DNA of 64,000 nucleotides from positions 162,986 through 226,985 of the IMG/VR virus record IMGVR_UViG_3300015265_000001. One strand, written 5' to 3'. Both the position numbers and the translations under genes were made by a program. The notes beneath the pieces were generated by a model. That model saw nothing but the letters and a program-made list of their open reading frames with translations. It made no database searches and was not told the DNA's origin. Numbering within the stretch: the stretch's first letter is position 1; each line of letters begins with the position of its first letter. This document shows positions 36,064 through 57,988 of the stretch, piece by piece.

Positions 36064-37752
36064 ATGTACATGCAGCTTTCTAACAACAGCAGCCGTTACG
36101 GTGATTTGCAACGTCGCGATACTCAAGATGTTGTTGAGGATGTGATGACGGATGTCCGTGACGCCGTTGTAGCGACCATGGGTCCAAACGGTAAGCTGTC
36201 CGCCATTACAGTCGGCACCAGTGTTAAAGTGACCAAAGACGGCGTAACAGTCGCCAAGTCGCTGAAGTTTGCCAACCCGTTCGAAGAAGCTGTTAACCGC
36301 ATCATTCTGGAACCGGCAATCAAGACCGATGACGAATGCGGTGACGGCACCACCACCACCATCCTGCTGACCGCAGAACTGTATCGCCTGTACGCTCAGT
36401 TCCCTCGTTATCGTGAACGCAAGTTCATCGACAAACTGGGTAACAAAATCATTGACCAACTTATCCGTTTGTCGGTGAAAGTCGACAACGACAGTGAGGA
36501 CCTGTTTAACCTGGCTCTAACGTCCTCTAACGGCGATGAGAAGCTCGCGGCGGTCATTACTAGTATCTATCTCGATGCTGGCGGCCGATACCCTGAGATC
36601 GAGCTCAAGGAAGGCCTGGGCGGTGATGACCAGATTGTTCGTAGCAACGGTCTGCCAGTAGCGCTGTCATACAGCAACCCATCCTTCTCGAAGAACGGCA
36701 ACGGCTCGACGTCCGACTTCACTGGATTCCGCGCGATTGTGATCGACGACAACGTCCGCAACATGGAGTCCCACGTCCTCGGTCCAATCCTGGCTAAACT
36801 GATCGAAGTTAATCCACAGCCGGTCCTGTTGATTGCTCGTTCTTTCGACAACCCAATCAACAGCATCATCCTGCAAGTCAACAACCAACTGAAGCGCCAG
36901 GCGTTCATCTGCGCACAAACCAACTTCGGTGGCTCGGTCGGTACTCTGCTGATGCAGGATATCTCCGTGCTGTTGAATGCACCGATGGTGAAAGTGTTCT
37001 CCGACGTCGTTAACGTCGAAACCACGATTTGCCTGGAAACTCTTCATATCGGTTCCGTTCGTTCGATCTTCGAACCTCAGATCGAGGCCACTCGTTTCCG
37101 TATCGACGAGCAAGTAGCATCGATCGAGAAGGAGCTGAACAGTTACGAGCGTGGTGAACGTTTCAGTGTTCGTGCACGTTTCAACGAGAAGCGTATCCGT
37201 GACCTTAAGGGCGAGCTGGTTACCGTGTTCGTCGGTGGCGAAACTCAGTCCGAGATCAAGGAACGCATCGACCGTTTCGAAGACGTATCGAAAGCTGTCA
37301 AGTCGGCGTTGGAGAACGGTATCCTGCCGGGCGTCGGTACTGCGTTGATTACTGCGGGTGTATTTGCACTCAACGATCTGTCCGATGAAGAAGAGGAAGA
37401 TCCAGAGTTCAAGAAGATCATTGAAGTGATGGAAGAAGTGATCTTCTCCCAGTACATGCTGCTGCAAGGCGAACTGATACTGCCGAACGACTCGCGTAAC
37501 CAACAGGCAAAAGAGCGCGCTATCCGCAGTGGGATCACCGGTCGGGTACTTGATATGGATGAACCTCGTCCATTCATCGTAACCAACCTGCGCGATAACA
37601 GTACTGGTACTCCGACTGAGTTGGGTATCTTCGATACGGCCTATGCATCGATCACTGCTCTGCGGGGTGGTATGCAAACGGCCAAGATCCTGGCGAGCCT
37701 CGATAGCGTTCTGATCGGGGACAAGCTGTCGGCGGTTAAAATCCAATCGTAA
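36064..37752 (+). CDS. groEL: Phage GroEL-like chaperonin
   Basis: TMGPNG, VTKDGVTVAK, GDGTTT, GG...EIKERIDRFEDV..AVKSALENGILPGVG, LGIFDT; no GGM tail. Confidence 0.93.
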   Translation: MYMQLSNNSSRYGDLQRRDTQDVVEDVMTDVRDAVVATMGPNGKLSAITVGTSVKVTKDGVTVAKSLKFANPFEEAVNRIILEPAIKTDDECGDGTTTTILLTAELYRLYAQFPRYRERKFIDKLGNKIIDQLIRLSVKVDNDSEDLFNLALTSSNGDEKLAAVITSIYLDAGGRYPEIELKEGLGGDDQIVRSNGLPVALSYSNPSFSKNGNGSTSDFTGFRAIVIDDNVRNMESHVLGPILAKLIEVNPQPVLLIARSFDNPINSIILQVNNQLKRQAFICAQTNFGGSVGTLLMQDISVLLNAPMVKVFSDVVNVETTICLETLHIGSVRSIFEPQIEATRFRIDEQVASIEKELNSYERGERFSVRARFNEKRIRDLKGELVTVFVGGETQSEIKERIDRFEDVSKAVKSALENGILPGVGTALITAGVFALNDLSDEEEEDPEFKKIIEVMEEVIFSQYMLLQGELILPNDSRNQQAKERAIRSGITGRVLDMDEPRPFIVTNLRDNSTGTPTELGIFDTAYASITALRGGMQTAKILASLDSVLIGDKLSAVKIQS

Positions 37753-40238: not shown

Positions 40239-40290
40239 CTATAAACCCCCAGGCAGTCGAGCCTGGGGGTTTATAGTTTCTTTTTTATTT
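40239..40290 (+). terminator. Rho-independent terminator
   Basis: CTATAAACCCCCAGGC / GCCTGGGGGTTTATAG 16-bp stem then a T-run. Confidence 0.85.
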
Positions 40291-40333
40291 GTACCGCTGT
40301 AACTTTGTAAAGACCATTAACAAGGAGTTCCAA

Positions 40334-41809
40334 ATGAATACACCAATCAATAAAGAGGCCACTTTCATCCCCGGGCCTGTTGGTAAAACCTTCTCCGAAG
40401 AAGAGATGCTGCTGATCAACCCGCATGCCAGTAAGCTTGCTGGTAACCTCATGGACGGTTATGTTTTTACCTGGAACAAGGAACGTGAGCTGTACGAGAA
40501 CGTCGGCGCTATTGCGGACTTGCTTGGGCGTAATACCCCACCTGAGCCGACGAAGGTCATGAGCTTCAACATGAAGGGAAGCTTCCCACATGACCACGCG
40601 CTACCAGAAGAAGGTATCGAGCCTGGCGATTGTTGCTTGCGCGGAAAACACTTCTGGGCGGTCACCGAGGAAGGCGTCTGGAAGGACTACGGTAATGTGG
40701 AAGCCCTTCCCGATAGGACTGCTAATCTCGTGTCGTTCAATTCCGGACCTCGTGATTGGGAGCGCGGTGAGATCAACTATGTAGGTGAGTATCCAGGTGC
40801 TTATGACAAACTGCCTGAGTTCTTGCCCTTCGTAAGTAACATCGGCGACGTAATGACCTGGCGTGGTCAGGACTGGGTGCGTAACACAACCAATAGCTGG
40901 ATACCCTACAGCCGGACGCCTGAAGAACAGTGCGTGGGTGTAAAGGAAGCGGTAGAGTCTCCTGAGCCCAGCGTGTCGGATAAACTCCGAAAGGAACATT
41001 ATCTCGAGGATGTCAGAGCTGGTTACGGTGGTACTTTCGAACAATGGCGCAGGCAGAACGGTGATCTCAACGCTGTATTGTGTATGGCTTCCGGTACGCC
41101 ACGTTCGGTTGATCAGTTGGAAGAGCAACGCATCCGTATGCACCAGCGCGATCTCCTGGCTGACAGCAAAGAACATCCTTCTCTGGATGATGTTGCTGTA
41201 TTGCTGGAAGGGGCTTTGACCAACTTCGGCAATGAGGAAAGTAATGCGGCTTTCAAAGCGCTCGATGCCTTGAAGAGGGTGAAAACTGATCTGCGTCGTA
41301 AGCGTCGTAATGCCTGGTTCCGTCGCATTCTGTTCTTGTTGATCCTGGGTGTTATCGGTTACGGTCTGTACAAGTGGATACCTACCCAAGTGGTATCTGG
41401 GCGTTACACCGTACCAAAGACCTGCTCTGCTCCTTTCGGCAACGGTACGATCACCGGCATGCGTTATTACGACTATGGCTACAAGTCATTGTTCGGTATC
41501 CACATGACGCTGGAAAGTACTGTGCGGGAAAGTACCATAGTCAGTGCAAATGGCCAGGAGTTTTCGATCTTTGGTTTGTCTCCTCGGAATGAAGATGCTT
41601 CGCCGGAAGAAATGGCGATAGCTGACAAGGTACTGAAAGTCGCCGAGGTGGAAGTGGAAACTGCTCCTAAGCCGCCTAAAGGTAAATGGTGGCGCATGAA
41701 CATCTGGACCAGTGACAAGGGTACTCAGCCGATGAAGCCTGCCGAGCTTTATTTGTTCGCGTCTGAGAAGAATACAACGATGGTCGCTTATAAGGACTTC
41801 TGCAAATGA
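40334..41809 (+). CDS. Membrane-anchored multi-domain hypothetical protein
   Basis: RKRRNAWFRR followed by TM ILFLLILGVIGYGLY; AAGGAG RBS. Confidence 0.8.
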   Translation: MNTPINKEATFIPGPVGKTFSEEEMLLINPHASKLAGNLMDGYVFTWNKERELYENVGAIADLLGRNTPPEPTKVMSFNMKGSFPHDHALPEEGIEPGDCCLRGKHFWAVTEEGVWKDYGNVEALPDRTANLVSFNSGPRDWERGEINYVGEYPGAYDKLPEFLPFVSNIGDVMTWRGQDWVRNTTNSWIPYSRTPEEQCVGVKEAVESPEPSVSDKLRKEHYLEDVRAGYGGTFEQWRRQNGDLNAVLCMASGTPRSVDQLEEQRIRMHQRDLLADSKEHPSLDDVAVLLEGALTNFGNEESNAAFKALDALKRVKTDLRRKRRNAWFRRILFLLILGVIGYGLYKWIPTQVVSGRYTVPKTCSAPFGNGTITGMRYYDYGYKSLFGIHMTLESTVRESTIVSANGQEFSIFGLSPRNEDASPEEMAIADKVLKVAEVEVETAPKPPKGKWWRMNIWTSDKGTQPMKPAELYLFASEKNTTMVAYKDFCK

Positions 41810-42612
41810 GACTAAAGGGCGCCTTTGGCAACATCTTTAAGCTCGAGATTGGTGAGGATGACAGAACGGTAGAACGCATCTTGCAGTACACCGGTCGCGT
41901 TTCTTACGAAGAGCCTAATCTCGAAGAGTCACGTGAGTGGATACAACGGCTTTACCATATTTGCGAGGAGAATATCGTGGGAAAAGTAGTGAACGTTGGA
42001 ACGGTCGGTCATATTGACCACGGTCGTCGTGGGTACAAATCCAATCCAGAGGACTACGCGTCGGCCGTGCCTCACGTCAAGTCTTACTACAACCCTTACA
42101 AGCCAGAATGTATTTACTGGTGGGAGGGTTTGATCTACGTGGGTGGTCGCATCATTCACAATCTTCGTATCCACGAAGTTAACAACCGCGCCGCCGGTGG
42201 TACTGAAGAAGGCTTGATTGTAGCGAAGCCCGATATCGACTGCGATTCGATTACTGACCTATCCGCGCTGGAGACAAACCAGTTCAAGGACAGGATCGTT
42301 GCCAAGCTGAATAAAGGAGCTGGCAAGACCATGCCTCCTGAAATTTCCAAGGCTATCGAAGCCTTCCTGTCTCCTCAACCGATGAAAGTGCAACCTGCTT
42401 TCATCGAACGGGAGTTCGAACGGGATCGTCGTACTGTGATCCCTACGCGTAAAGCAATCGCCTGGGCCATCCAGTTGATGGTGTGGAACGATGATGCAAT
42501 GAAGAAGTTGGCGGGGGTAGGACGGAATGATGTTTACGTTCGCTACGTAGCCCCGCCGTTCCCTGGTTCTAAACATGACAAACTTACTGACGAAGGAAAA
42601 TGGGATGCCTGA
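41806..42612 (+). CDS. Hypothetical protein carrying an EF-Tu G1-like segment
   Basis: VNVGTVGHIDHG at aa 62-73. Confidence 0.8.
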   Translation: MRLKGAFGNIFKLEIGEDDRTVERILQYTGRVSYEEPNLEESREWIQRLYHICEENIVGKVVNVGTVGHIDHGRRGYKSNPEDYASAVPHVKSYYNPYKPECIYWWEGLIYVGGRIIHNLRIHEVNNRAAGGTEEGLIVAKPDIDCDSITDLSALETNQFKDRIVAKLNKGAGKTMPPEISKAIEAFLSPQPMKVQPAFIEREFERDRRTVIPTRKAIAWAIQLMVWNDDAMKKLAGVGRNDVYVRYVAPPFPGSKHDKLTDEGKWDA

Positions 42613-42787
42613 GAATAATTTCAAGGAAGAAATCGAACAGATCGTTCAGGAAATTAAAATGAACGGTCCTGATGTTTATACCACCCTGAAAACCGTTCCG
42701 GGTATTGGTACTGTTGTCATCAAATCGAAAACCGTTCCCAGCGGCCTGATCATCGAACCCTGGGTTAACCCAAATGGAGATAAGTAA
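42605..42787 (+). CDS. Small hypothetical protein
   Basis: Overlapping start. Confidence 0.65.
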   Translation: MPENNFKEEIEQIVQEIKMNGPDVYTTLKTVPGIGTVVIKSKTVPSGLIIEPWVNPNGDK

Positions 42788-43434
42788 TGGGGCAGAGTAA
42801 CAAGAGCGGTCAGCGTAATCCGAACAATCCGCCTAACCCTAACAAAGGACGCAGTATGGTTCCGGTTAATCATGCGCTGAAGTACACCGAAGAAGATCTG
42901 GCCAGAACCATGGAGTTCGCTAAGCGTAATGCGCGGGGCAACTTGCTGAAAGAACTCGGCCTTACCGAGCTTAACTCCGGTATTGGTAGCACTCCGTCTT
43001 CTAACTGGTTTGCTAAAGGTGAGCAGGATGACTTCCCTGAGTTGGTTAATCAGGATCGTGCAAGCCTGTGCCTCGGCAAGCTTACTGATGACGAGATCGC
43101 CAACCTGGTGTTTATGCAGGGTGACATCAGTAAAGAAGAAGACATGCGGTTGATGCTGGCCCATATGGAAGTCGGGAAAGAGTACTACTCGAAGATCGCT
43201 GCGGTCATGGGTGGTAAAGAGCGCATCCGCTGGCTGTCCCGTCATCTGGAACTGTCTCTGCAACGTCAGCGGTCCCAGCGTACCACTATCTGGAACTATA
43301 TCCTGGATACGTACGCTGAGTGCGGTGGCGAGGCGTCGATCCTTGAGGCCTGTGAGAAGTTGGGACTGCCGAAGGAATACGCAATGGCGCGTTTGCATCC
43401 AGAGCGTGAAGTTGTTAAGGAGGGAACATCGTGA
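42787..43434 (+). CDS. Hypothetical protein
   Basis: TAATG coupling. Confidence 0.8.
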   Translation: MGQSNKSGQRNPNNPPNPNKGRSMVPVNHALKYTEEDLARTMEFAKRNARGNLLKELGLTELNSGIGSTPSSNWFAKGEQDDFPELVNQDRASLCLGKLTDDEIANLVFMQGDISKEEDMRLMLAHMEVGKEYYSKIAAVMGGKERIRWLSRHLELSLQRQRSQRTTIWNYILDTYAECGGEASILEACEKLGLPKEYAMARLHPEREVVKEGTS

Positions 43435-54229: not shown

Positions 54230-57200
54230 TTAAGGAACTACGGCACCCGCTGCGCCCGTCCACTCCACACCATCCCAGGTGAAGGTGATGTAGGTACGGC
54301 TACCAGTCAGAGCTGGTGGCGAACCACCGTTCCAGACCAGCGCTGTCGCACCCGTAGGAGCAAAGGTAATTACCCCCGCTGCACCGTTGATTTTCATCAC
54401 CAGCACTTTGGCTCGGGCAGGGGATTTTGGTCCGTCGCCCAAGGTAATGGTTTTGGCTGTAGCGCCGGTGTTCGTCACAACGATGAACTGATCAACCAAT
54501 GCATCGATCGTAGCCGTTGCCGAAATAGTCCGGATAGCCAGATCGTACTGGTTGAATTCAATCCAGCCGTTGTTCTTGTAGACGTAGGTCTTGTTGTCGT
54601 TACCACCAGCTGGGCCGGAGATACCAGGAGTAACCGGCGTGTAGACAACCCACGTGTGGTCACCTTTACGCAGGTACAGGTTGGTATCAGTCGGTACGTC
54701 AGCAAAGCCAGGTACGAAGGCGTTGATCTGGGCTTGCAGCTTACCGAAGGCTGTGATGACAGTATCAGCGGCTACAACAGCGGTGGCGGTTGCCAGGCTG
54801 AAGCCAGTCAGCGTAGTCGAACGAACCCGTGCTTGCGTGAAGTAGAGGTTAGTGGTGCCCTCTACAACAGCGTCCGAGGTACCTGGAGAAGCTACCAGCC
54901 CTACATACGTCGAACCCGACCAACGGTATTGCGCGTTGGTGTTGAGCGCGATGTAGATTTTGCCAGATTCACCTGTAGCCGGGAAAGCCGCTTGGTTAGC
55001 GAACTCCAACACGTCATCGACATAGCTCGGCAGTTGACCTGCCGGGATGGTGCCGTTAACGAGGGTAGCAACCGAAACGCCCAGCTCTGTAAGAGCAACA
55101 CCGCCCAGGCTAGCCAGTGTAGGAGGGGTATAAACCGCCCAGTCACCGAGCAGCTGCCCATTCAGGCGCAGACGCATGTACGGATTGCCATCAGCCGGTG
55201 GTTCGTTGATTTGAGGTGGGAATACCAGCTCAACCCACTCACCTTCGTTGGTGGTACTGCCGTCAACCAATTGGCGAACGTACAGCTTACCGTCAACCAT
55301 GTTCGGCGCTTCGTCTACCAGCAGAGGTACCCACTCGTTACCGAGGCGGACAACCTTACCAACAGACACCTCTGGCGAGTTGACATCACCCGCAACCAGC
55401 TGACCCCAGTAGACCCAACCGCGATCCGCCGTTTTGTAGTAGACCTTGAAGCTGTCCGATACAGCCCAGTCACCGATGTTACCGGTGAAGCCAGCACCCG
55501 GAGCATCTTGGCCGGCAGGCAGAGTAATCCAGGACGAACCTTTATCACCCTTGTCGCCTTTCTTGCCAATGCCCTGAGGGCCAGGAACACCCTGGATACC
55601 CTGAGGACCACGAACCAGACCGATGTCGATCCACTTACCACCATCGGCAGTCGTCCAGATGGCCAGGTTGTTACCAACCAGATAACCGTCACCCAGGTTG
55701 CCTGTAGGGTGAGCAGTTGCCAGATCACCCAGAGTGTTGTACGCACCGAGGATGTTGATCGACGTACCCGCGTCACCTTTCTCACCGTCTTTACCTTGAG
55801 GACCAGGCAGACCAGTGATATCGAAAGGACCGGCCCACGCACCATCGGTCAGGACATAGAGCATCTTGTCGTTGGCGGTGAAGTAACCATCGCCTTCTTC
55901 AGCAACAGAGGTAGTTGGCAGGTAAGTAGGACCAGCCACCACACCACGCAGCTTGATACCGGTACCCATCGGGCCTTTGTCGCCAGGCGCGCCTACGGCA
56001 CCACCATCAACCCACTCACCACCGATAGACAGCCGAATGCGTTTGTCCAGGTCAACGTAAGCCTTACCTGGGTTAGCCGCAGCATCCGGTGGAGTGGCGT
56101 CTTCTGGTGTCAGTACCTTGATGATGGTAATCGAGGAACCATTTGCACCATCGTTACCGTTCTGCCCGTCTTCACCTTTGAAAGACCCCAGAGGGATCCA
56201 GCCACCACCTACATAAGCGTAGAGGGTATTGGTGTCACGTACCGAGTAAACATCTTGCTCGGCAGGTGTAGCGGTCAGTTCAGTAAAGGTCGAAACCGAA
56301 CCTTTGATGATGATGTTGGTACCGTTAGTGCCGTTGGTGCCTTTAAGGCTGACCAGGAACTCATTCTCGGAACCGCTGTGACCTTGAGCCAGCCACAGTT
56401 GATACGTCGATTGACCGCGGAATGGACCTACGTCTTCCCACACGCCTTCGGTGAGAATGTGCAGGTGGCCATCGTCATTGGTGACGTAGCCGTCTTGCTC
56501 TTCTGGGTTTACGATGTTGCCCAGTTGAGCAGCGTTGGCCACGGTGCCTTTAACAGTCAGGTTCTTACCGCGAGGACCATCCGGACCTGGTACAGTCGAC
56601 TTGAGGGAAACCAGCCACTGTTGCAGAGTACCGGAGAAACCGTCTTCCACAGCCAGTTCGTAGGCGGACAGACCACCAACCGAACCGAGGTCAACGTATT
56701 GGGCTTCATCGGTCACCCAGACGTACAGGTGACTACCGACATACCAGGCTTCAGTTGCAACACCCGGCGTCGGCAGAGCGGCTTCAGATGGCTGAGAACC
56801 CTTGACTTCGAAAGGAGACCGCGCAGGACCTTCGTTGCCCGGAGGACCAGGTTCAGTGGACTTCAGGGTATTCAGGAAGTCTTGCAGCGTGCCAGCGTTG
56901 CCGGCCTGCAACCAGAGTTGGTAGTTATCCTTACCGACCAGGCTTGCCAGCCATTGAGGCTTAGTACCCGAGAAGCCATCTTCGACGGCGATCTCATAAG
57001 CACTTTGACCAGCAGGACCTTCCAGACCCAGCGAAGACCATACTGGTGTTTCTGGATCATTACCCGCACCGCCAGGGATCAGGATCCAGAGATCGCTCTT
57101 CCACAGGTATGCATCACCAACAGCGTTGATGCTTGGATCCGGCAACGCTTGACCCGAAGGCCAGGTACCCAGCAGTGTCAGACCGCGGTCGCCCAACAGG

Positions 57201-57988
57201 CTACCAGAATCGACCCACTCAGTGCTGTTCCAGATAAACAGCGCGCCTTCTACGAAGTAAGCCGTACCGTTGGCCAGACCTTCAGTAGGAATGGCATCCA
57301 GCTCAGCCTGAGAATTCAGACGACCGATAACCTTGATGTTACCGACCTCGCCATCCTTACCTTGCAGGCTGGCAATCCATTCTGCTTCGGTACCGATGGT
57401 AGGGTCCAGGCGTTTGGCCGTTTGGTAAGCGGATTCACCCACCAGCTTGGCCAGCCACTGAGGTTCAGTACCGGTTTCGCCGTTGGCTACCGCAACCTCG
57501 TAGGCGCTCCTGCCGTCGTCACCTTTCAGACCGATAGTGACCCAGCCGTCAGGTTGAGGAATGAGCAGCCAGATGTCGCTCTTCCAGACATACGCGTCAC
57601 CCACTTCGTTCAGGGTGTGATCCGGCAGGGCCTGGTTATCTGGCCAGGTACCCAGCAGGGTGATACCACGAGGACCCAACAGGGAACCCGAGCTTACCCA
57701 TTCAACGGCGTTCCATACTTGCAGCGAGCCTTCAACAAAGTAGGCGTCGCCTTTGCCCAGGCTTTCGGTTGGGAGAGCATCCAATTCAGCCTGGGTGATA
57801 CGACCGATAACGTTCAGACCGTTAACCACCAGAGCCAGGAACTGGTCGTAGAGGTAACGGGTACGGTTAGCCAGGAGAATAGGGGCACGGTTGTCCGGGC
57901 CATCAGGACCGCCACGGACGGGTTCCCCTTGATCGATAAGGGGGATGTCTTGGGGGAATACACTTTCTTCAGTGATGTTTGTAGGCAT
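54230..57988 (-). CDS. Long tail fibre with collagen-like, SAYExA repeat and foldon-like modules
   Basis: Gly-X-Y runs; SAYExAVxxGFxGTxxxWLASL repeats; ~50-aa knuckle repeats; DVLEFANQAAFPATGESGKIY; VVEGTTNLYFTQARVR. Confidence 0.88.
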   Translation of the reverse strand: MPTNITEESVFPQDIPLIDQGEPVRGGPDGPDNRAPILLANRTRYLYDQFLALVVNGLNVIGRITQAELDALPTESLGKGDAYFVEGSLQVWNAVEWVSSGSLLGPRGITLLGTWPDNQALPDHTLNEVGDAYVWKSDIWLLIPQPDGWVTIGLKGDDGRSAYEVAVANGETGTEPQWLAKLVGESAYQTAKRLDPTIGTEAEWIASLQGKDGEVGNIKVIGRLNSQAELDAIPTEGLANGTAYFVEGALFIWNSTEWVDSGSLLGDRGLTLLGTWPSGQALPDPSINAVGDAYLWKSDLWILIPGGAGNDPETPVWSSLGLEGPAGQSAYEIAVEDGFSGTKPQWLASLVGKDNYQLWLQAGNAGTLQDFLNTLKSTEPGPPGNEGPARSPFEVKGSQPSEAALPTPGVATEAWYVGSHLYVWVTDEAQYVDLGSVGGLSAYELAVEDGFSGTLQQWLVSLKSTVPGPDGPRGKNLTVKGTVANAAQLGNIVNPEEQDGYVTNDDGHLHILTEGVWEDVGPFRGQSTYQLWLAQGHSGSENEFLVSLKGTNGTNGTNIIIKGSVSTFTELTATPAEQDVYSVRDTNTLYAYVGGGWIPLGSFKGEDGQNGNDGANGSSITIIKVLTPEDATPPDAAANPGKAYVDLDKRIRLSIGGEWVDGGAVGAPGDKGPMGTGIKLRGVVAGPTYLPTTSVAEEGDGYFTANDKMLYVLTDGAWAGPFDITGLPGPQGKDGEKGDAGTSINILGAYNTLGDLATAHPTGNLGDGYLVGNNLAIWTTADGGKWIDIGLVRGPQGIQGVPGPQGIGKKGDKGDKGSSWITLPAGQDAPGAGFTGNIGDWAVSDSFKVYYKTADRGWVYWGQLVAGDVNSPEVSVGKVVRLGNEWVPLLVDEAPNMVDGKLYVRQLVDGSTTNEGEWVELVFPPQINEPPADGNPYMRLRLNGQLLGDWAVYTPPTLASLGGVALTELGVSVATLVNGTIPAGQLPSYVDDVLEFANQAAFPATGESGKIYIALNTNAQYRWSGSTYVGLVASPGTSDAVVEGTTNLYFTQARVRSTTLTGFSLATATAVVAADTVITAFGKLQAQINAFVPGFADVPTDTNLYLRKGDHTWVVYTPVTPGISGPAGGNDNKTYVYKNNGWIEFNQYDLAIRTISATATIDALVDQFIVVTNTGATAKTITLGDGPKSPARAKVLVMKINGAAGVITFAPTGATALVWNGGSPPALTGSRTYITFTWDGVEWTGAAGAVVP

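What the first reader, a model, noticed from the sequence alone, without database searches (positions are those of the whole stretch)
41989..42024. Near-exact EF-Tu G1 (P-loop entry) peptide embedded in an unrelated phage protein
Seen: residues 62-73 of ORF 41806-42612 read VNVGTVGHIDHG, followed by RRG. Known: E. coli EF-Tu reads VNVGTIGHVDHG-KTT, so 10 of 12 positions are identical and the other two are I/V swaps. The catalytic GKT is replaced and no G2-G4 motifs (RGITI, DCPG, NKxD) are visible, so this is not a GTPase. Inference: a captured tuf fragment kept as a mimic or decoy of EF-Tu. EF-Tu is a target or cofactor of anti-phage effectors (Lit protease, Doc kinase).
Basis: partly seen in the sequence, partly recalled or inferred. 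Interest (0 to 1): 0.68.

Follow-up and report, generated by a model that had tools for sequence, protein, structure and literature searches.

The report
EF-Tu-like relic in jumbo-phage protein
A 12-residue stretch almost identical to the start of the bacterial translation factor EF-Tu is the best-conserved part of an otherwise unknown giant-phage protein, and similar stretches recur in many unrelated phage proteins; it is not a working GTPase, and the proposed role as a decoy for anti-phage defences is not supported.

Summary
ORF 41806-42612 (+) encodes 268 aa, and residues 62-73 read VNVGTVGHIDHG then RRG. That is 10/12 identical to EF-Tu, against 6e-7 such matches expected in the window.

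The gene is real (dN/dS 0.15-0.23). It belongs to a small family known only from 214-233 kb EL/phiKZ-like phage contigs in metagenomes.

The 12-mer is the most conserved window of the protein (0.90 against a mean of 0.35). N63, V64, G65, T66, G68 and H69 are invariant in 35 sequences, and the codons vary synonymously. The family profile hits only EF-Tu in the PDB (E 1e-6).

A second motif, ERILQYTGR at residues 23-31, hits almost only EF-G, at the helix just after its P-loop.

I read this as an old, exapted remnant of the N-terminus of a translational GTPase. The Lys-Thr of G1 and all of G2-G4 are missing, so it cannot be a GTPase.

The same octamer without GK[ST] occurs in 56 ORFs (29 sequence clusters) of viral contigs. 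Shuffled controls gave 1 and 3 hits. Cultured phages carry it in genes annotated "putative elongation factor Tu".

The decoy idea is unsupported: the known defence sites on EF-Tu lie outside this segment. Both structure predictions failed, so the function is inferred, not shown.

The parts
41806..42612 (+). Gene for the 268-aa protein. It is the long form of a family found only in jumbo phages. Its ATG overlaps the stop of the upstream gene (ATGA at 41806-41809).
   Evidence: 13 homologues by word search, 10 by exhaustive phmmer, more by profile. dN/dS is 0.15-0.23 against P0001-P0003. The same ATGA overlap is seen in L001, L003, L121, L122, L243 and L244.
41989..42024 (+). EF-Tu G1-like peptide VNVGTVGHIDHG (residues 62-73). 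It corresponds to strand beta1 plus the first half of the P-loop of EF-Tu (E. coli residues 12-23).
   Evidence: Invariant N63, V64, G65, T66, G68 and H69; D71 at 97% in 35 sequences. It is the top-ranked sliding 12-mer for conservation. The family profile against the PDB gives 59 EF-Tu sequences first, E 1.1e-6 to 1.5e-3, aligned only here.
41983..42036 (+). Extended conserved block KVVNVGTVGHIDHGRRGY (residues 60-77). R74 sits where EF-Tu has the phosphate-binding Lys24, and R75 where it has Thr25.
   Evidence: Column statistics: R/K 83%, G76 69%, Y77 86%. P0007 and P0009 lack H72-G73 altogether.
41872..41898 (+). Second motif ERILQYTGR (residues 23-31). It resembles helix alpha1 of EF-G, which directly follows the P-loop (GKTTTT-ERILFYTG in E. 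coli).
   Evidence: A profile of this motif alone (A6, 18 columns) against the PDB gives 42 of 43 hits to EF-G, mitochondrial EF-G or RRF2mt, all at residues about 20-45 of the chains; best E 0.026. The E. coli EF-G N-terminus was read by tool. The pattern [ILVM]L.YTG occurs only once in all six frames of the window, in this ORF.
42103..42171 (+). Conserved block PECIYWWEGLIYVGGRIIHNLRI (residues 100-122), predicted as a three-strand meander. It is the core of the C-terminal module.
   Evidence: G108 invariant; V112, G114 and R115 near-invariant. Strands E103-106, E109-112 and E115-119 appear in a low-confidence model. An 80-aa paralogue of this module alone lies at L010:2437-2679 (BLASTP E 5e-4).
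42424..42477 (+). Conserved block DRRTVIPTRKAIAWAIQL (residues 207-224). It is helical in the weak models.
   Evidence: D207, R208, V211, P213, R215, I218, W220 and A221 are invariant in 14 sequences. P213 is invariant in 35.
40289..41809 (+). Upstream gene, up to 506 aa, with a hydrophobic span (RRILFLLILGVIGYGLYKWIP). It looks translationally coupled to the gene studied and keeps that position in relatives.
   Evidence: No Pfam family reaches its threshold.
42575..42787 (+). Downstream 70-aa ORF that overlaps the 3' end of the gene by 38 nt. It is syntenic in relatives, where it is 60-64 aa.
   Evidence: No family hit.

Best explanation
The protein belongs to a small family, so far found only in phages. 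Its N-terminal region is an old, exapted remnant of the first 35 or so residues of a translational GTPase. The remnant has two pieces: strand beta1 with the first half of the P-loop (EF-Tu-like, residues 62-73), and a piece of helix alpha1 (EF-G-like, residues 23-31).

The residues that bind and hydrolyse GTP are gone: Lys-Thr of G1, and all of G2, G3 and G4. Domains II and III are also absent. So the protein is a non-catalytic 'pseudo-G1' module fused to an unrelated C-terminal module (a beta-meander plus helices).

Shown:
- Sequence similarity that is significant and specific to EF-Tu.
- Extreme purifying selection on the peptide itself, not on the DNA.
- Loss of the catalytic residues.
- Recurrence of the same octamer in many other phage proteins.

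Inferred:
- The strand serves to present the loop H69-x-D71-(H/W)-G-(R/K)-x-G-Y, which is the only conserved polar patch, as a contact site for a partner or ligand.
- H69 and D71 are the P-loop residues that set translational GTPases apart from other G proteins. In ribosome-bound factors the Asp lies next to the sarcin-ricin loop. My preferred guess is therefore a partner within the translation apparatus. I put about 0.3 on that guess, given that the rest of this explanation is right.
For: 1. The motif matches EF-Tu 10/12 with 6e-7 matches expected in the window. The short-form relatives start MKSIKHVNVGTVGHVDHG, which is 12/13 identical to E. coli EF-Tu and lies at nearly the same distance from the N-terminus. 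Real EF-Tu proteins that read HVNVGTVGHVDHGKT exist.
2. phmmer of P0011:1-60 against the PDB gives 59 EF-Tu sequences first, E 5e-4 to 0.03. The profile of 35 family members gives 59 EF-Tu sequences first, E 1e-6 to 1.5e-3.
3. An independent profile of the second motif hits EF-G-type factors in 42 of 43 cases, at the helix that follows their P-loop. In short forms the order is canonical, GHVDHG-R-MLQYTGRR, with the KTTxTE segment missing.
4. The 12-mer is the most conserved window of the protein (0.90 against 0.35). Third codon positions vary freely. dN/dS is 0.15-0.23. Relatives found through C-terminal patterns alone all carry the motif.
5. The positions that vary in the family (67 V/I, 70 I/V/M, 72 H/W) correspond to EF-Tu residues 17, 20 and 22. 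D71 corresponds to Asp21, which is a signature of translational GTPases (PMC5084732).
6. VNVGT[VIM]GH without GK[ST] occurs in 56 ORFs of viral contigs, which fall into 29 BLASTP clusters. Shuffled-order control patterns gave 3 and 1 hits. The set includes cultured phages.
Against: - There is no usable structure. AlphaFold2 gave pLDDT 42.6 and 50.5 and left the motif region unstructured.
- The similarity to EF-Tu covers only about 15-20 residues. The second motif is individually marginal (best E 0.026). The long N-terminal extension alone does not retrieve EF-G from the PDB.
- In the window protein the two motifs lie in the reverse of the GTPase order. Their relative position changed at least 5 times on well-supported branches of the family tree, so the ancestral order is not known.
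- I know of no single GTPase that has both the EF-Tu-type strand and the EF-G-type helix.
- A few distant members have lost D71 and the loop (P0039-P0041).
- The gene neighbourhood points to no translation function.
- The window protein has no basic, RNA-binding-like tail (pI 6.7).
Confidence: 0.5

Rival explanations
1. Factor mimic acting on the ribosome. The module copies the P-loop face of EF-Tu/EF-G, docks at the GTPase-associated centre (sarcin-ricin loop), and so tunes or blocks host translation factors or shields the site.
For: - H69 and D71 are conserved, and they correspond to the residues specific to translational GTPases (PMC5084732).
- Other phage proteins with the same strand also keep ERGITI (G2) and end in very basic K/R tails, as in Vibrio phages 150E35-1 and Va2, PaBG gp192, Dolphis gp88 and henriette VPDG_00052.
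- The octamer recurs in 29 sequence clusters.
Against: - A 12-residue strand-loop without switch regions or domains II-V cannot rebuild the factor's ribosome-binding surface.
- The window protein has no basic tail.
- No ribosomal or translation genes lie nearby.
- Nothing was tested directly.
Confidence: 0.15
2. One reading: a decoy or mimic of EF-Tu that absorbs or misleads anti-phage effectors acting on EF-Tu (Lit, Doc, the type IV Thoeris caspase, Avs7).
For: - EF-Tu is a repeated player in anti-phage defence (PMC13581612; bioRxiv 10.1101/2024.10.24.620036).
- The motif stays EF-Tu-like over long evolutionary distances.
Against: - The known target sites are absent from the protein: Gly59-Ile60, R45 and R59, Thr382, and domains II-III.
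- The Thoeris caspase is promiscuous and needs only an Arg at P1.
- The copied segment is buried in folded EF-Tu.
- PaBG gp192 reads NVGTVGHIDHGK, whereas the one Pseudomonas EF-Tu in the PDB hits reads NVGTIGHVDHGK (4iw3_B; that this chain is from Pseudomonas is my recollection). So the motif does not strictly track the host's EF-Tu.
Confidence: 0.07
3. Convergence. A beta-strand followed by G-H-x-D is a common metal-binding arrangement (for example in zinc exopeptidases of clan MH; my knowledge), and the likeness to EF-Tu is coincidental.
For: - Only N, V, G, T, G, H and mostly D are fixed.
- Variants GHCDHG, GHCDW and GHCDY, with a Cys between H and D, recur in other phage families.
- The order of the two motifs is not fixed.
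Against: - In short forms the identity extends to 12/13, including the preceding His. In ChrisDB gp215 it runs on through a recognisable alpha1.
- The second motif independently points to EF-G.
- PDB hits are exclusively EF-Tu, with no metalloenzyme among them.
- No third or fourth conserved metal ligand is present.
Confidence: 0.1
4. A tag for self-assembly or strand addition. The exposed strand VNVGTxGH pairs with a beta-sheet edge of another copy or of a phage or host partner.
For: - In several families the octamer is the extreme C-terminal tail, for example L083 ends ...NVNVGTIGHVA and L065 ends ...GHIDHGR.
- It appears at the N-terminus, internally or at the C-terminus of unrelated proteins.
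- AlphaFold2 leaves the region unstructured in the monomer, which is weak evidence.
Against: - There is no positive evidence of binding.
- Invariance of the polar residues N, T and H is not what generic strand pairing would need.
- The different contexts may be one divergent, permuted superfamily, in which the strand is part of the fold (weak hhalign lead, E 0.029).
Confidence: 0.1
5. Chance resemblance, or a neutral leftover with no function.
For: A 10/12 match to some protein of a whole host proteome is expected about 0.6 times per window.
Against: - The motif is invariant in 35 sequences with mean column identity 24%.
- Its codons change synonymously.
- Profile E-values reach 1e-6.
- Shuffled control patterns gave 1-3 hits against 99.
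Confidence: 0.02

Closest known systems
EF-Tu G domain, G1 region (Pfam PF00009 GTP_EFTU)
   Same: Residues 62-73 match EF-Tu residues 12-23 at 10/12, and short-form relatives match at 12/13. The pattern of fixed and variable positions resembles that of EF-Tu. The Asp and His that mark translational GTPases are kept.
   Different: Lys24-Thr25 are replaced by Arg-Arg, and deleted in some relatives. There is no G2, G3 or G4 and no domains II/III. No Pfam hit. The rest of the protein is unrelated.
EF-G helix alpha1 (GKTTTT-ERILFYTG)
   Same: ERILQYTGR at residues 23-31. The family consensus eERiLyYTGr equals the Thermus EF-G sequence TERILYYTGR at 9/10. The PDB hits are almost only EF-G, at that position.
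   Different: In the window protein it lies 38 residues before the strand instead of just after the P-loop. The E-values are marginal. EF-G's own strand and P-loop (NIGISAHIDAGKTT) are less similar than EF-Tu's.
Small phage proteins annotated 'putative elongation factor Tu' or 'putative GTPase' (phrog_12626, phrog_27465, phrog_28329, phrog_11003). Examples: Erwinia phage ChrisDB gp215, Salmonella phage pSal-SNUABM-04, Vibrio phages Va2 and henriette, Pseudomonas phages PaBG gp192 and Dolphis gp88.
   Same: They are phage proteins of 59-267 aa that keep the EF-Tu N-terminal strand and loop, lack a complete G domain, and have unknown function.
   Different: There is no detectable similarity outside the motif. 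Many of them keep GK[ST], a longer alpha1, sometimes ERGITI, and basic tails. The window family has none of these, and it carries a different C-terminal module and the extra EF-G-like motif.
Pseudo-GTPases, meaning G-domain relatives that have lost nucleotide binding (my knowledge; not tested here).
   Same: GTPase-derived sequence kept for a non-catalytic role.
   Different: Known pseudo-GTPases keep the whole G fold. Here only about 15-35 residues are recognisable.

Membership tests
Translational GTPase (GTP_EFTU, PF00009) | G1 Walker A motif GxxxxGK[ST] | tested here: not met
   The sequence reads G68-H-I-D-H-G73-R74-R75. R or K stands at the Lys position in 83% of the family, and no Ser/Thr follows. 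P0007 and P0009 lack H-G.
Translational GTPase (GTP_EFTU, PF00009) | G2 switch I (RGITI with the catalytic Thr) | tested here: not met
   No RGIT[IVL] pattern in the ORF. The only one in the window lies in an unrelated minus-strand ORF at nt 57670.
Translational GTPase (GTP_EFTU, PF00009) | G3 DxxG (DCPGH) and G4 [NT]KxD | tested here: not met
   No D.PGH pattern. Reading the 268 residues gives no DxxG. The only NK is LNKGAG, which is not NKxD.
Translational GTPase (GTP_EFTU, PF00009) | Profile match to the G domain, and beta-barrel domains II/III | tested here: not met
   No Pfam family at E<=1 for the window protein. Only 6 of 35 relatives touch GTP_EFTU, best E 0.12 against a cutoff of 26.5 bits. 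The PDB alignments cover only the motif.
Jumbo-phage 'VNVGT' family (defined here: P0001-P0041, P0043) | Invariant NVGT[VI]GH, an LxYTG motif nearby, the G-L-x-x-V-[GA]-G-R-[VI]-I hairpin, and the V-[IL]-P-[ST]-[RK] helix | tested here: met
   All four elements are present at residues 63-69, 26-30, 108-117 and 211-216. E-values to relatives run from 1e-166 to 1e-15.
Jumbo-phage 'VNVGT' family (defined here) | Conserved position: GroEL-like gene, then a 187-aa gene, a 417-596-aa gene, this gene (ATGA overlap), a gene of about 62 aa, and a gene of about 214 aa | tested here: met
   Window; L001 and L003; L009; L122; L243 and L244.
phrog_27465 / phrog_12626 (small EF-Tu-like phage proteins) | Full-length profile match | tested here: inconclusive
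   phrog_27465 scores E 0.0041, but only residues 60-74 match profile positions 11-25 of 59. There is no hit to phrog_12626. With the motif masked, the families do not cluster together.
Decoy substrate of EF-Tu-directed defence effectors (Lit, type IV Thoeris caspase, Doc, Avs7) | Presence of the targeted EF-Tu site: Gly59-Ile60 in RGITI, R45/R59, Thr382, or the domain II-III surface | tested here: not met
   None of these segments has a counterpart in the protein. The site positions come; those for Lit and Doc are from my own knowledge.
Decoy substrate of EF-Tu-directed defence effectors | Protection of the phage against such systems | not testable with these tools
   This needs plaque assays.

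The most novel reading that the evidence does not exclude
The strand and half P-loop of EF-Tu may be a portable module that large phages have attached again and again to different proteins, at N-termini, internally and as C-terminal tails. Its purpose would be to engage a conserved host component that recognises translational GTPases: the ribosomal GTPase centre, EF-Tu itself during folding, or an unknown sensor. That would make it a new class of translation-directed mimicry module, and the window protein would be one member of it.
Probability: 0.15. Interest if true: 0.85.

Novelty: new variant of a known kind. Interest (0 to 1): 0.55.

Why it matters
If the module has a function of its own, it marks an uncharacterised way for large phages to touch the host translation machinery or its guardians. 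It also gives a simple sequence handle, NVGT[VI]GH without GK[ST], for finding such genes.

Several cultured phages carry related genes and could be tested at once: the Erwinia and Salmonella Machinavirus-like phages, PaBG, and Vibrio phages Va2 and henriette.

There is also a practical point for annotation. These genes are being labelled 'elongation factor Tu' or 'GTPase', although they lack every catalytic motif except part of G1.

Tried and rejected
- **Structure.** AlphaFold2 of the window protein with 20 sequences gave pLDDT 42.6. The minimal 122-aa member P0030 with 39 sequences gave 50.5. Both are too poor for a fold search, so none was run.
- **Complex.** Complex prediction on two copies of the window protein returned no answer, neither support nor evidence against. 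I did not test EF-Tu or EF-Ts as partners.
- **Circular permutation.** The L022/L065/L112/L080 proteins have a VAG hairpin, then a PRN...W helix, then VNVGTIGH. They might be a circular permutation of the window family. hhalign does pair the hairpins, but at E 0.029 and probability 1.7%, so this is not established.
- **HTH reading of the N-terminal extension.** phmmer of residues 1-60 hits Lrp/AsnC-type regulators at E 0.14-0.5, which is not significant.
- **Host identification.** There is no family member in 185,579 species genomes. EF-Tu with Val at position 17 occurs in scattered taxa and gives no host clue.
- **Wider searches.** Nothing in 50,697 cultured phage records at the protein level or at the DNA level. 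Only 4 loci in JGI metagenome contigs. A motif-free search for relatives of the L112 family found only the three loci already known.
- **Neighbours.** Pfam and PHROG scans gave only the GroEL-like gene and families of unknown function.
- **Literature.** Eight full-text searches found no study of phage EF-Tu-fragment proteins.
- **A DNA- or RNA-level role** (antisense, recombination site). Rejected, because close relatives differ at synonymous positions all through the motif.
Full report
**The observation.** ORF 41806-42612 (+) encodes 268 aa. Residues 62-73 (nt 41989-42024) read VNVGTVGHIDHG, followed by RRG. I took the EF-Tu sequence from tools rather than memory. PDB chains 2hcj_A and 5i4r_C read VNVGTIGHVDHGKT, and E. 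coli tufA read from NC_000913.3 agrees. Ten of the 12 positions are identical, and the other two are I/V swaps.

With the window's own amino-acid frequencies, 6.2e-7 matches of at least 10/12 are expected among its 127,930 six-frame 12-mers. The runner-up in the window has 6/12, and 100 shuffled windows reached 5-7/12. One caveat applies. Against an entire host proteome, about 0.6 generic 10/12 matches would be expected, so the match needs independent support. The ORF has no G2, G3 or G4 motif and no Pfam hit.

**The setting.** The window is the last 64 kb of IMGVR_UViG_3300015265_000001, a 226,985-bp contig. Its 1252-aa fibre-like protein matches Psa21, EL-like and phiKZ-like Pseudomonas jumbo phages at 27-37% identity. 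A GroEL-like chaperonin lies at 36064-37752. There is no close DNA relative among 50,697 phage records.

The gene sits in a plus-strand block of unknown genes, in this order: GroEL-like gene, other genes, a 187-aa gene, a 506-aa gene with a hydrophobic span, this gene (ATGA overlap), a 70-aa gene and a 215-aa gene. That order is kept in related 214-229 kb contigs.

**The family.** Word-based and exhaustive searches and two profile rounds gave about 40 distinct relatives. All come from metagenomes, and several lie on 214-233 kb contigs. None is in 185,579 bacterial and archaeal species genomes, and none is in cultured phages. The gene is under purifying selection, with dN/dS 0.15-0.23 against three close relatives.

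In 35 aligned sequences with mean column identity 24%, the invariant columns are N63, V64, G65, T66, G68, H69, G108 and P213; D71 is at 97%. Codons within the motif differ at third positions even between close relatives. Selection therefore acts on the peptide, not on the DNA. Relatives retrieved only through the C-terminal patterns PE[WC]IYWW and GLIYVGGR all carry the motif.

**Is it EF-Tu-like by descent?** Many relatives are short forms that begin MKSIKHVNVGTVGHVDHGR... That is 12/13 identical to E. coli EF-Tu and lies at nearly the same distance from the N-terminus. The exact 13-mer, with Val at position 17, exists in real EF-Tu of scattered bacteria.

phmmer of the first 60 residues of a short form against 177,635 PDB sequences returns 59 EF-Tu sequences first, with E 5e-4 to 0.03. 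The 35-sequence profile returns 59 EF-Tu sequences first, with E 1.1e-6 to 1.5e-3. In every case only the motif and a few following residues align.

A second conserved motif, E[RK][IVM]Lx-Y-T-G, is ERILQYTGR at residues 23-31 of the window protein. I modelled it on its own with 18 columns that exclude the first motif. 42 of its 43 PDB hits are EF-G, mitochondrial EF-G or RRF2mt, all at the helix that follows the P-loop. The best E is 0.026, and the family consensus eERiLyYTGr compares with TERILYYTGR of Thermus EF-G. The E. coli sequence GKTTTTERILFYTG was read by tool. That pattern occurs once in all six frames of the window, in this ORF.

In short forms the two motifs are adjacent and in the GTPase order, GHVDHG-R-MLQYTGRR. 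Only the six residues that hold the catalytic Lys-Thr are missing. Taken together, the N-terminal region is best read as a remnant of the N-terminus of a translational GTPase. The capture is not recent. Identity to E. coli tufA is 29/36 nt, which is what the amino acids impose, and blastn finds nothing.

**Limits of that reading.** In the window protein the helix-like motif lies before the strand, not after it. On the family tree its position (before, after, both or absent) changes at least five times on well-supported branches, and the window's arrangement is nested among 'after' forms. Two members have a copy on both sides (P0031 and P0036). That fits an ancestral duplication followed by differential loss, but the root is unknown. 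The second motif is individually marginal. Residues 1-60 alone do not retrieve EF-G, and weakly resemble Lrp-type HTH proteins at E 0.14-0.5.

**It is not a one-off.** I scanned 2.9 million viral contigs with a degenerate DNA pattern for V-N-V-G-T-[VIM]-G-H and found 99 loci. Two control patterns with the same codons in shuffled order found 3 and 1.

- 42 of the ORFs have GHxDHGK[TS]. Many of these are full-length EF-Tu-like ORFs, probably host DNA next to prophages or genes of very large phages.
- 56 ORFs lack GK[ST], though most keep GH-x-D. With the motif masked they fall into 29 BLASTP clusters, 12 of them with two or more members. The window family is the largest.
- The octamer sits at the N-terminus, internally, or as the very C-terminal tail. 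For example, L083 ends ...NVNVGTIGHVA, with the next gene starting 10 nt later.

Cultured phages have such genes too. There is a 109-aa protein in Erwinia and Salmonella jumbo phages (ChrisDB gp215, phrog_12626), which GenBank annotates as 'putative elongation factor Tu' or 'putative GTPase'. Others are PaBG gp192, Dolphis gp88 and Cygsa01 'tuf' (148 aa). Vibrio phages henriette (59 aa), 150E35-1 and Va2 also keep ERGITI and end in very basic tails.

All matching PHROG families are of unknown function. Eight full-text literature searches found no study of these proteins.

**What it does.** It cannot be a GTPase. R74-R75 replace Lys24-Thr25, two relatives lack H-G altogether, and G2-G4 and domains II/III are absent.

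The polar residues kept are N, T, H, D and a basic residue at the Lys position. D71 corresponds to Asp21, a residue specific to translational GTPases. Asp21 contributes to ribosome-stimulated catalysis, and in ribosome-bound EF-G it coordinates Mg2+ next to A2662 of the sarcin-ricin loop (PMC5084732).

My best explanation has two parts. The strand is kept to present this loop as a non-catalytic contact site. The module has been fused to different partner domains, and an 80-aa paralogue of the window family's C-terminal module exists without it. A partner in the translation apparatus is my preferred guess, but nothing here shows it. The window protein has no basic tail (pI 6.7), and its neighbours are uninformative.

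**The decoy idea.** Defence systems do act on EF-Tu, but elsewhere on the protein:

- Lit cuts at Gly59-Ile60.
- The type IV Thoeris caspase cuts after R45 and R59, and it is promiscuous for Arg.
- Avs7 binds domains II-III.
- Doc phosphorylates Thr382 (my knowledge).

None of these sites exists in the window protein, and the copied segment is the buried central strand of the G domain. PaBG gp192 has V17/I20, whereas the one Pseudomonas EF-Tu among the PDB hits has I17/V20 (the organism of that chain is my recollection). So the motif does not strictly track the host sequence. I give the decoy idea about 0.07.

**What failed.** Both AlphaFold2 jobs gave unusable models (pLDDT 42.6 and 50.5), with the motif region unstructured. 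The homodimer test gave no answer. A possible circular permutation linking the window family to the families with a C-terminal motif is only a weak lead (hhalign E 0.029).

**Verdict.** The peptide is an EF-Tu-type relic under strong selection, and the protein is not a GTPase. There is no evidence for the decoy role, and there are positional arguments against it.

The wider pattern is a recurrent EF-Tu strand/half-P-loop module in many phage proteins, some already mislabelled as EF-Tu. It is uncharacterised and testable in cultured phages. Novelty: a new variant of a known but unstudied kind. Interest: 0.55.

Noticed in passing
window 36064-37752 (+): A phage-encoded GroEL-like chaperonin (Pfam Cpn60_TCP1 E 5.6e-23; phrog_5725 E 5e-119), as in Pseudomonas phage EL. 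It is syntenic in related contigs.
   Followed up: partly
window 54230-57988 (-): A 1252-aa protein like a fibre or virion structural protein. It matches Psa21, EL-like and phiKZ-like jumbo phages at 27-37% identity, which places the window among phiKZ/EL-like jumbo phages. GC rises to 0.56 here.
   Followed up: partly
L037, L051, L098, L028 (viral contigs): These ORFs read KFERTKPHVNVGTIGH, exactly as in EF-Tu, and then switch abruptly to unrelated sequence (ILPGGRTGYARSLL... or VLPRRHGG...). They look like junctions inside the 5' end of tuf: either an integration site or an assembly chimera.
   Followed up: no
L024, L027, L054, L073 (35-48 kb viral contigs); L046, L101: Small ORFs of 72-77 aa, and two of 194 aa, that copy EF-Tu residues about 3-40, including KEKFERTKP and GK[ANT]. 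They probably correspond to the 59-position family phrog_27465, which has unknown function.
   Followed up: partly
L117 (Vibrio phage 150E35-1 P0089), L120 (Va2), L116 (henriette), L115 (PaBG gp192), L118 (Dolphis gp88): Phage proteins that combine the EF-Tu G1 strand (some also with ERGITI) with strongly basic, arginine-rich C-terminal tails. This suggests RNA or ribosome binding. Two of them are annotated as EF-Tu.
   Followed up: partly
L019, L021, L025, L079, L081, L087 and others (viral contigs up to 533 kb): Full-length EF-Tu-like ORFs of about 390-430 aa on contigs classed as viral. Many share the unusual helix LTAAILAVQAxxGLA. They are either host DNA flanking prophages or EF-Tu genes of very large phages.
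   Followed up: no
L010:2437-2679 (+): An 80-aa ORF directly downstream of family member P0024. It is a paralogue of the C-terminal module alone (LIVAGWVVW...PSREHIDKVLENYY; BLASTP E 5e-4) and has no EF-Tu-like part.
   Followed up: yes
L013:5001-5942 (P0037), L042: A 313-332-aa protein of a different phage type that carries FIKHVNVGTVGHIDWG near its C-terminus. It has no similarity to the window protein or to its upstream neighbour.
   Followed up: partly
window 42787-43434 (+): A 215-aa protein with a sub-threshold Myb-like DNA-binding hit (E 0.001, 19.5 bits against a cutoff of 24.4) and a hit to phrog_36034, which has unknown function.
   Followed up: no
P0042: A 162-aa database protein with two EF-Tu N-termini in tandem. 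This is almost certainly an assembly chimera. It shows that genuine EF-Tu can read HVNVGTVGHVDHGKTT.
   Followed up: no
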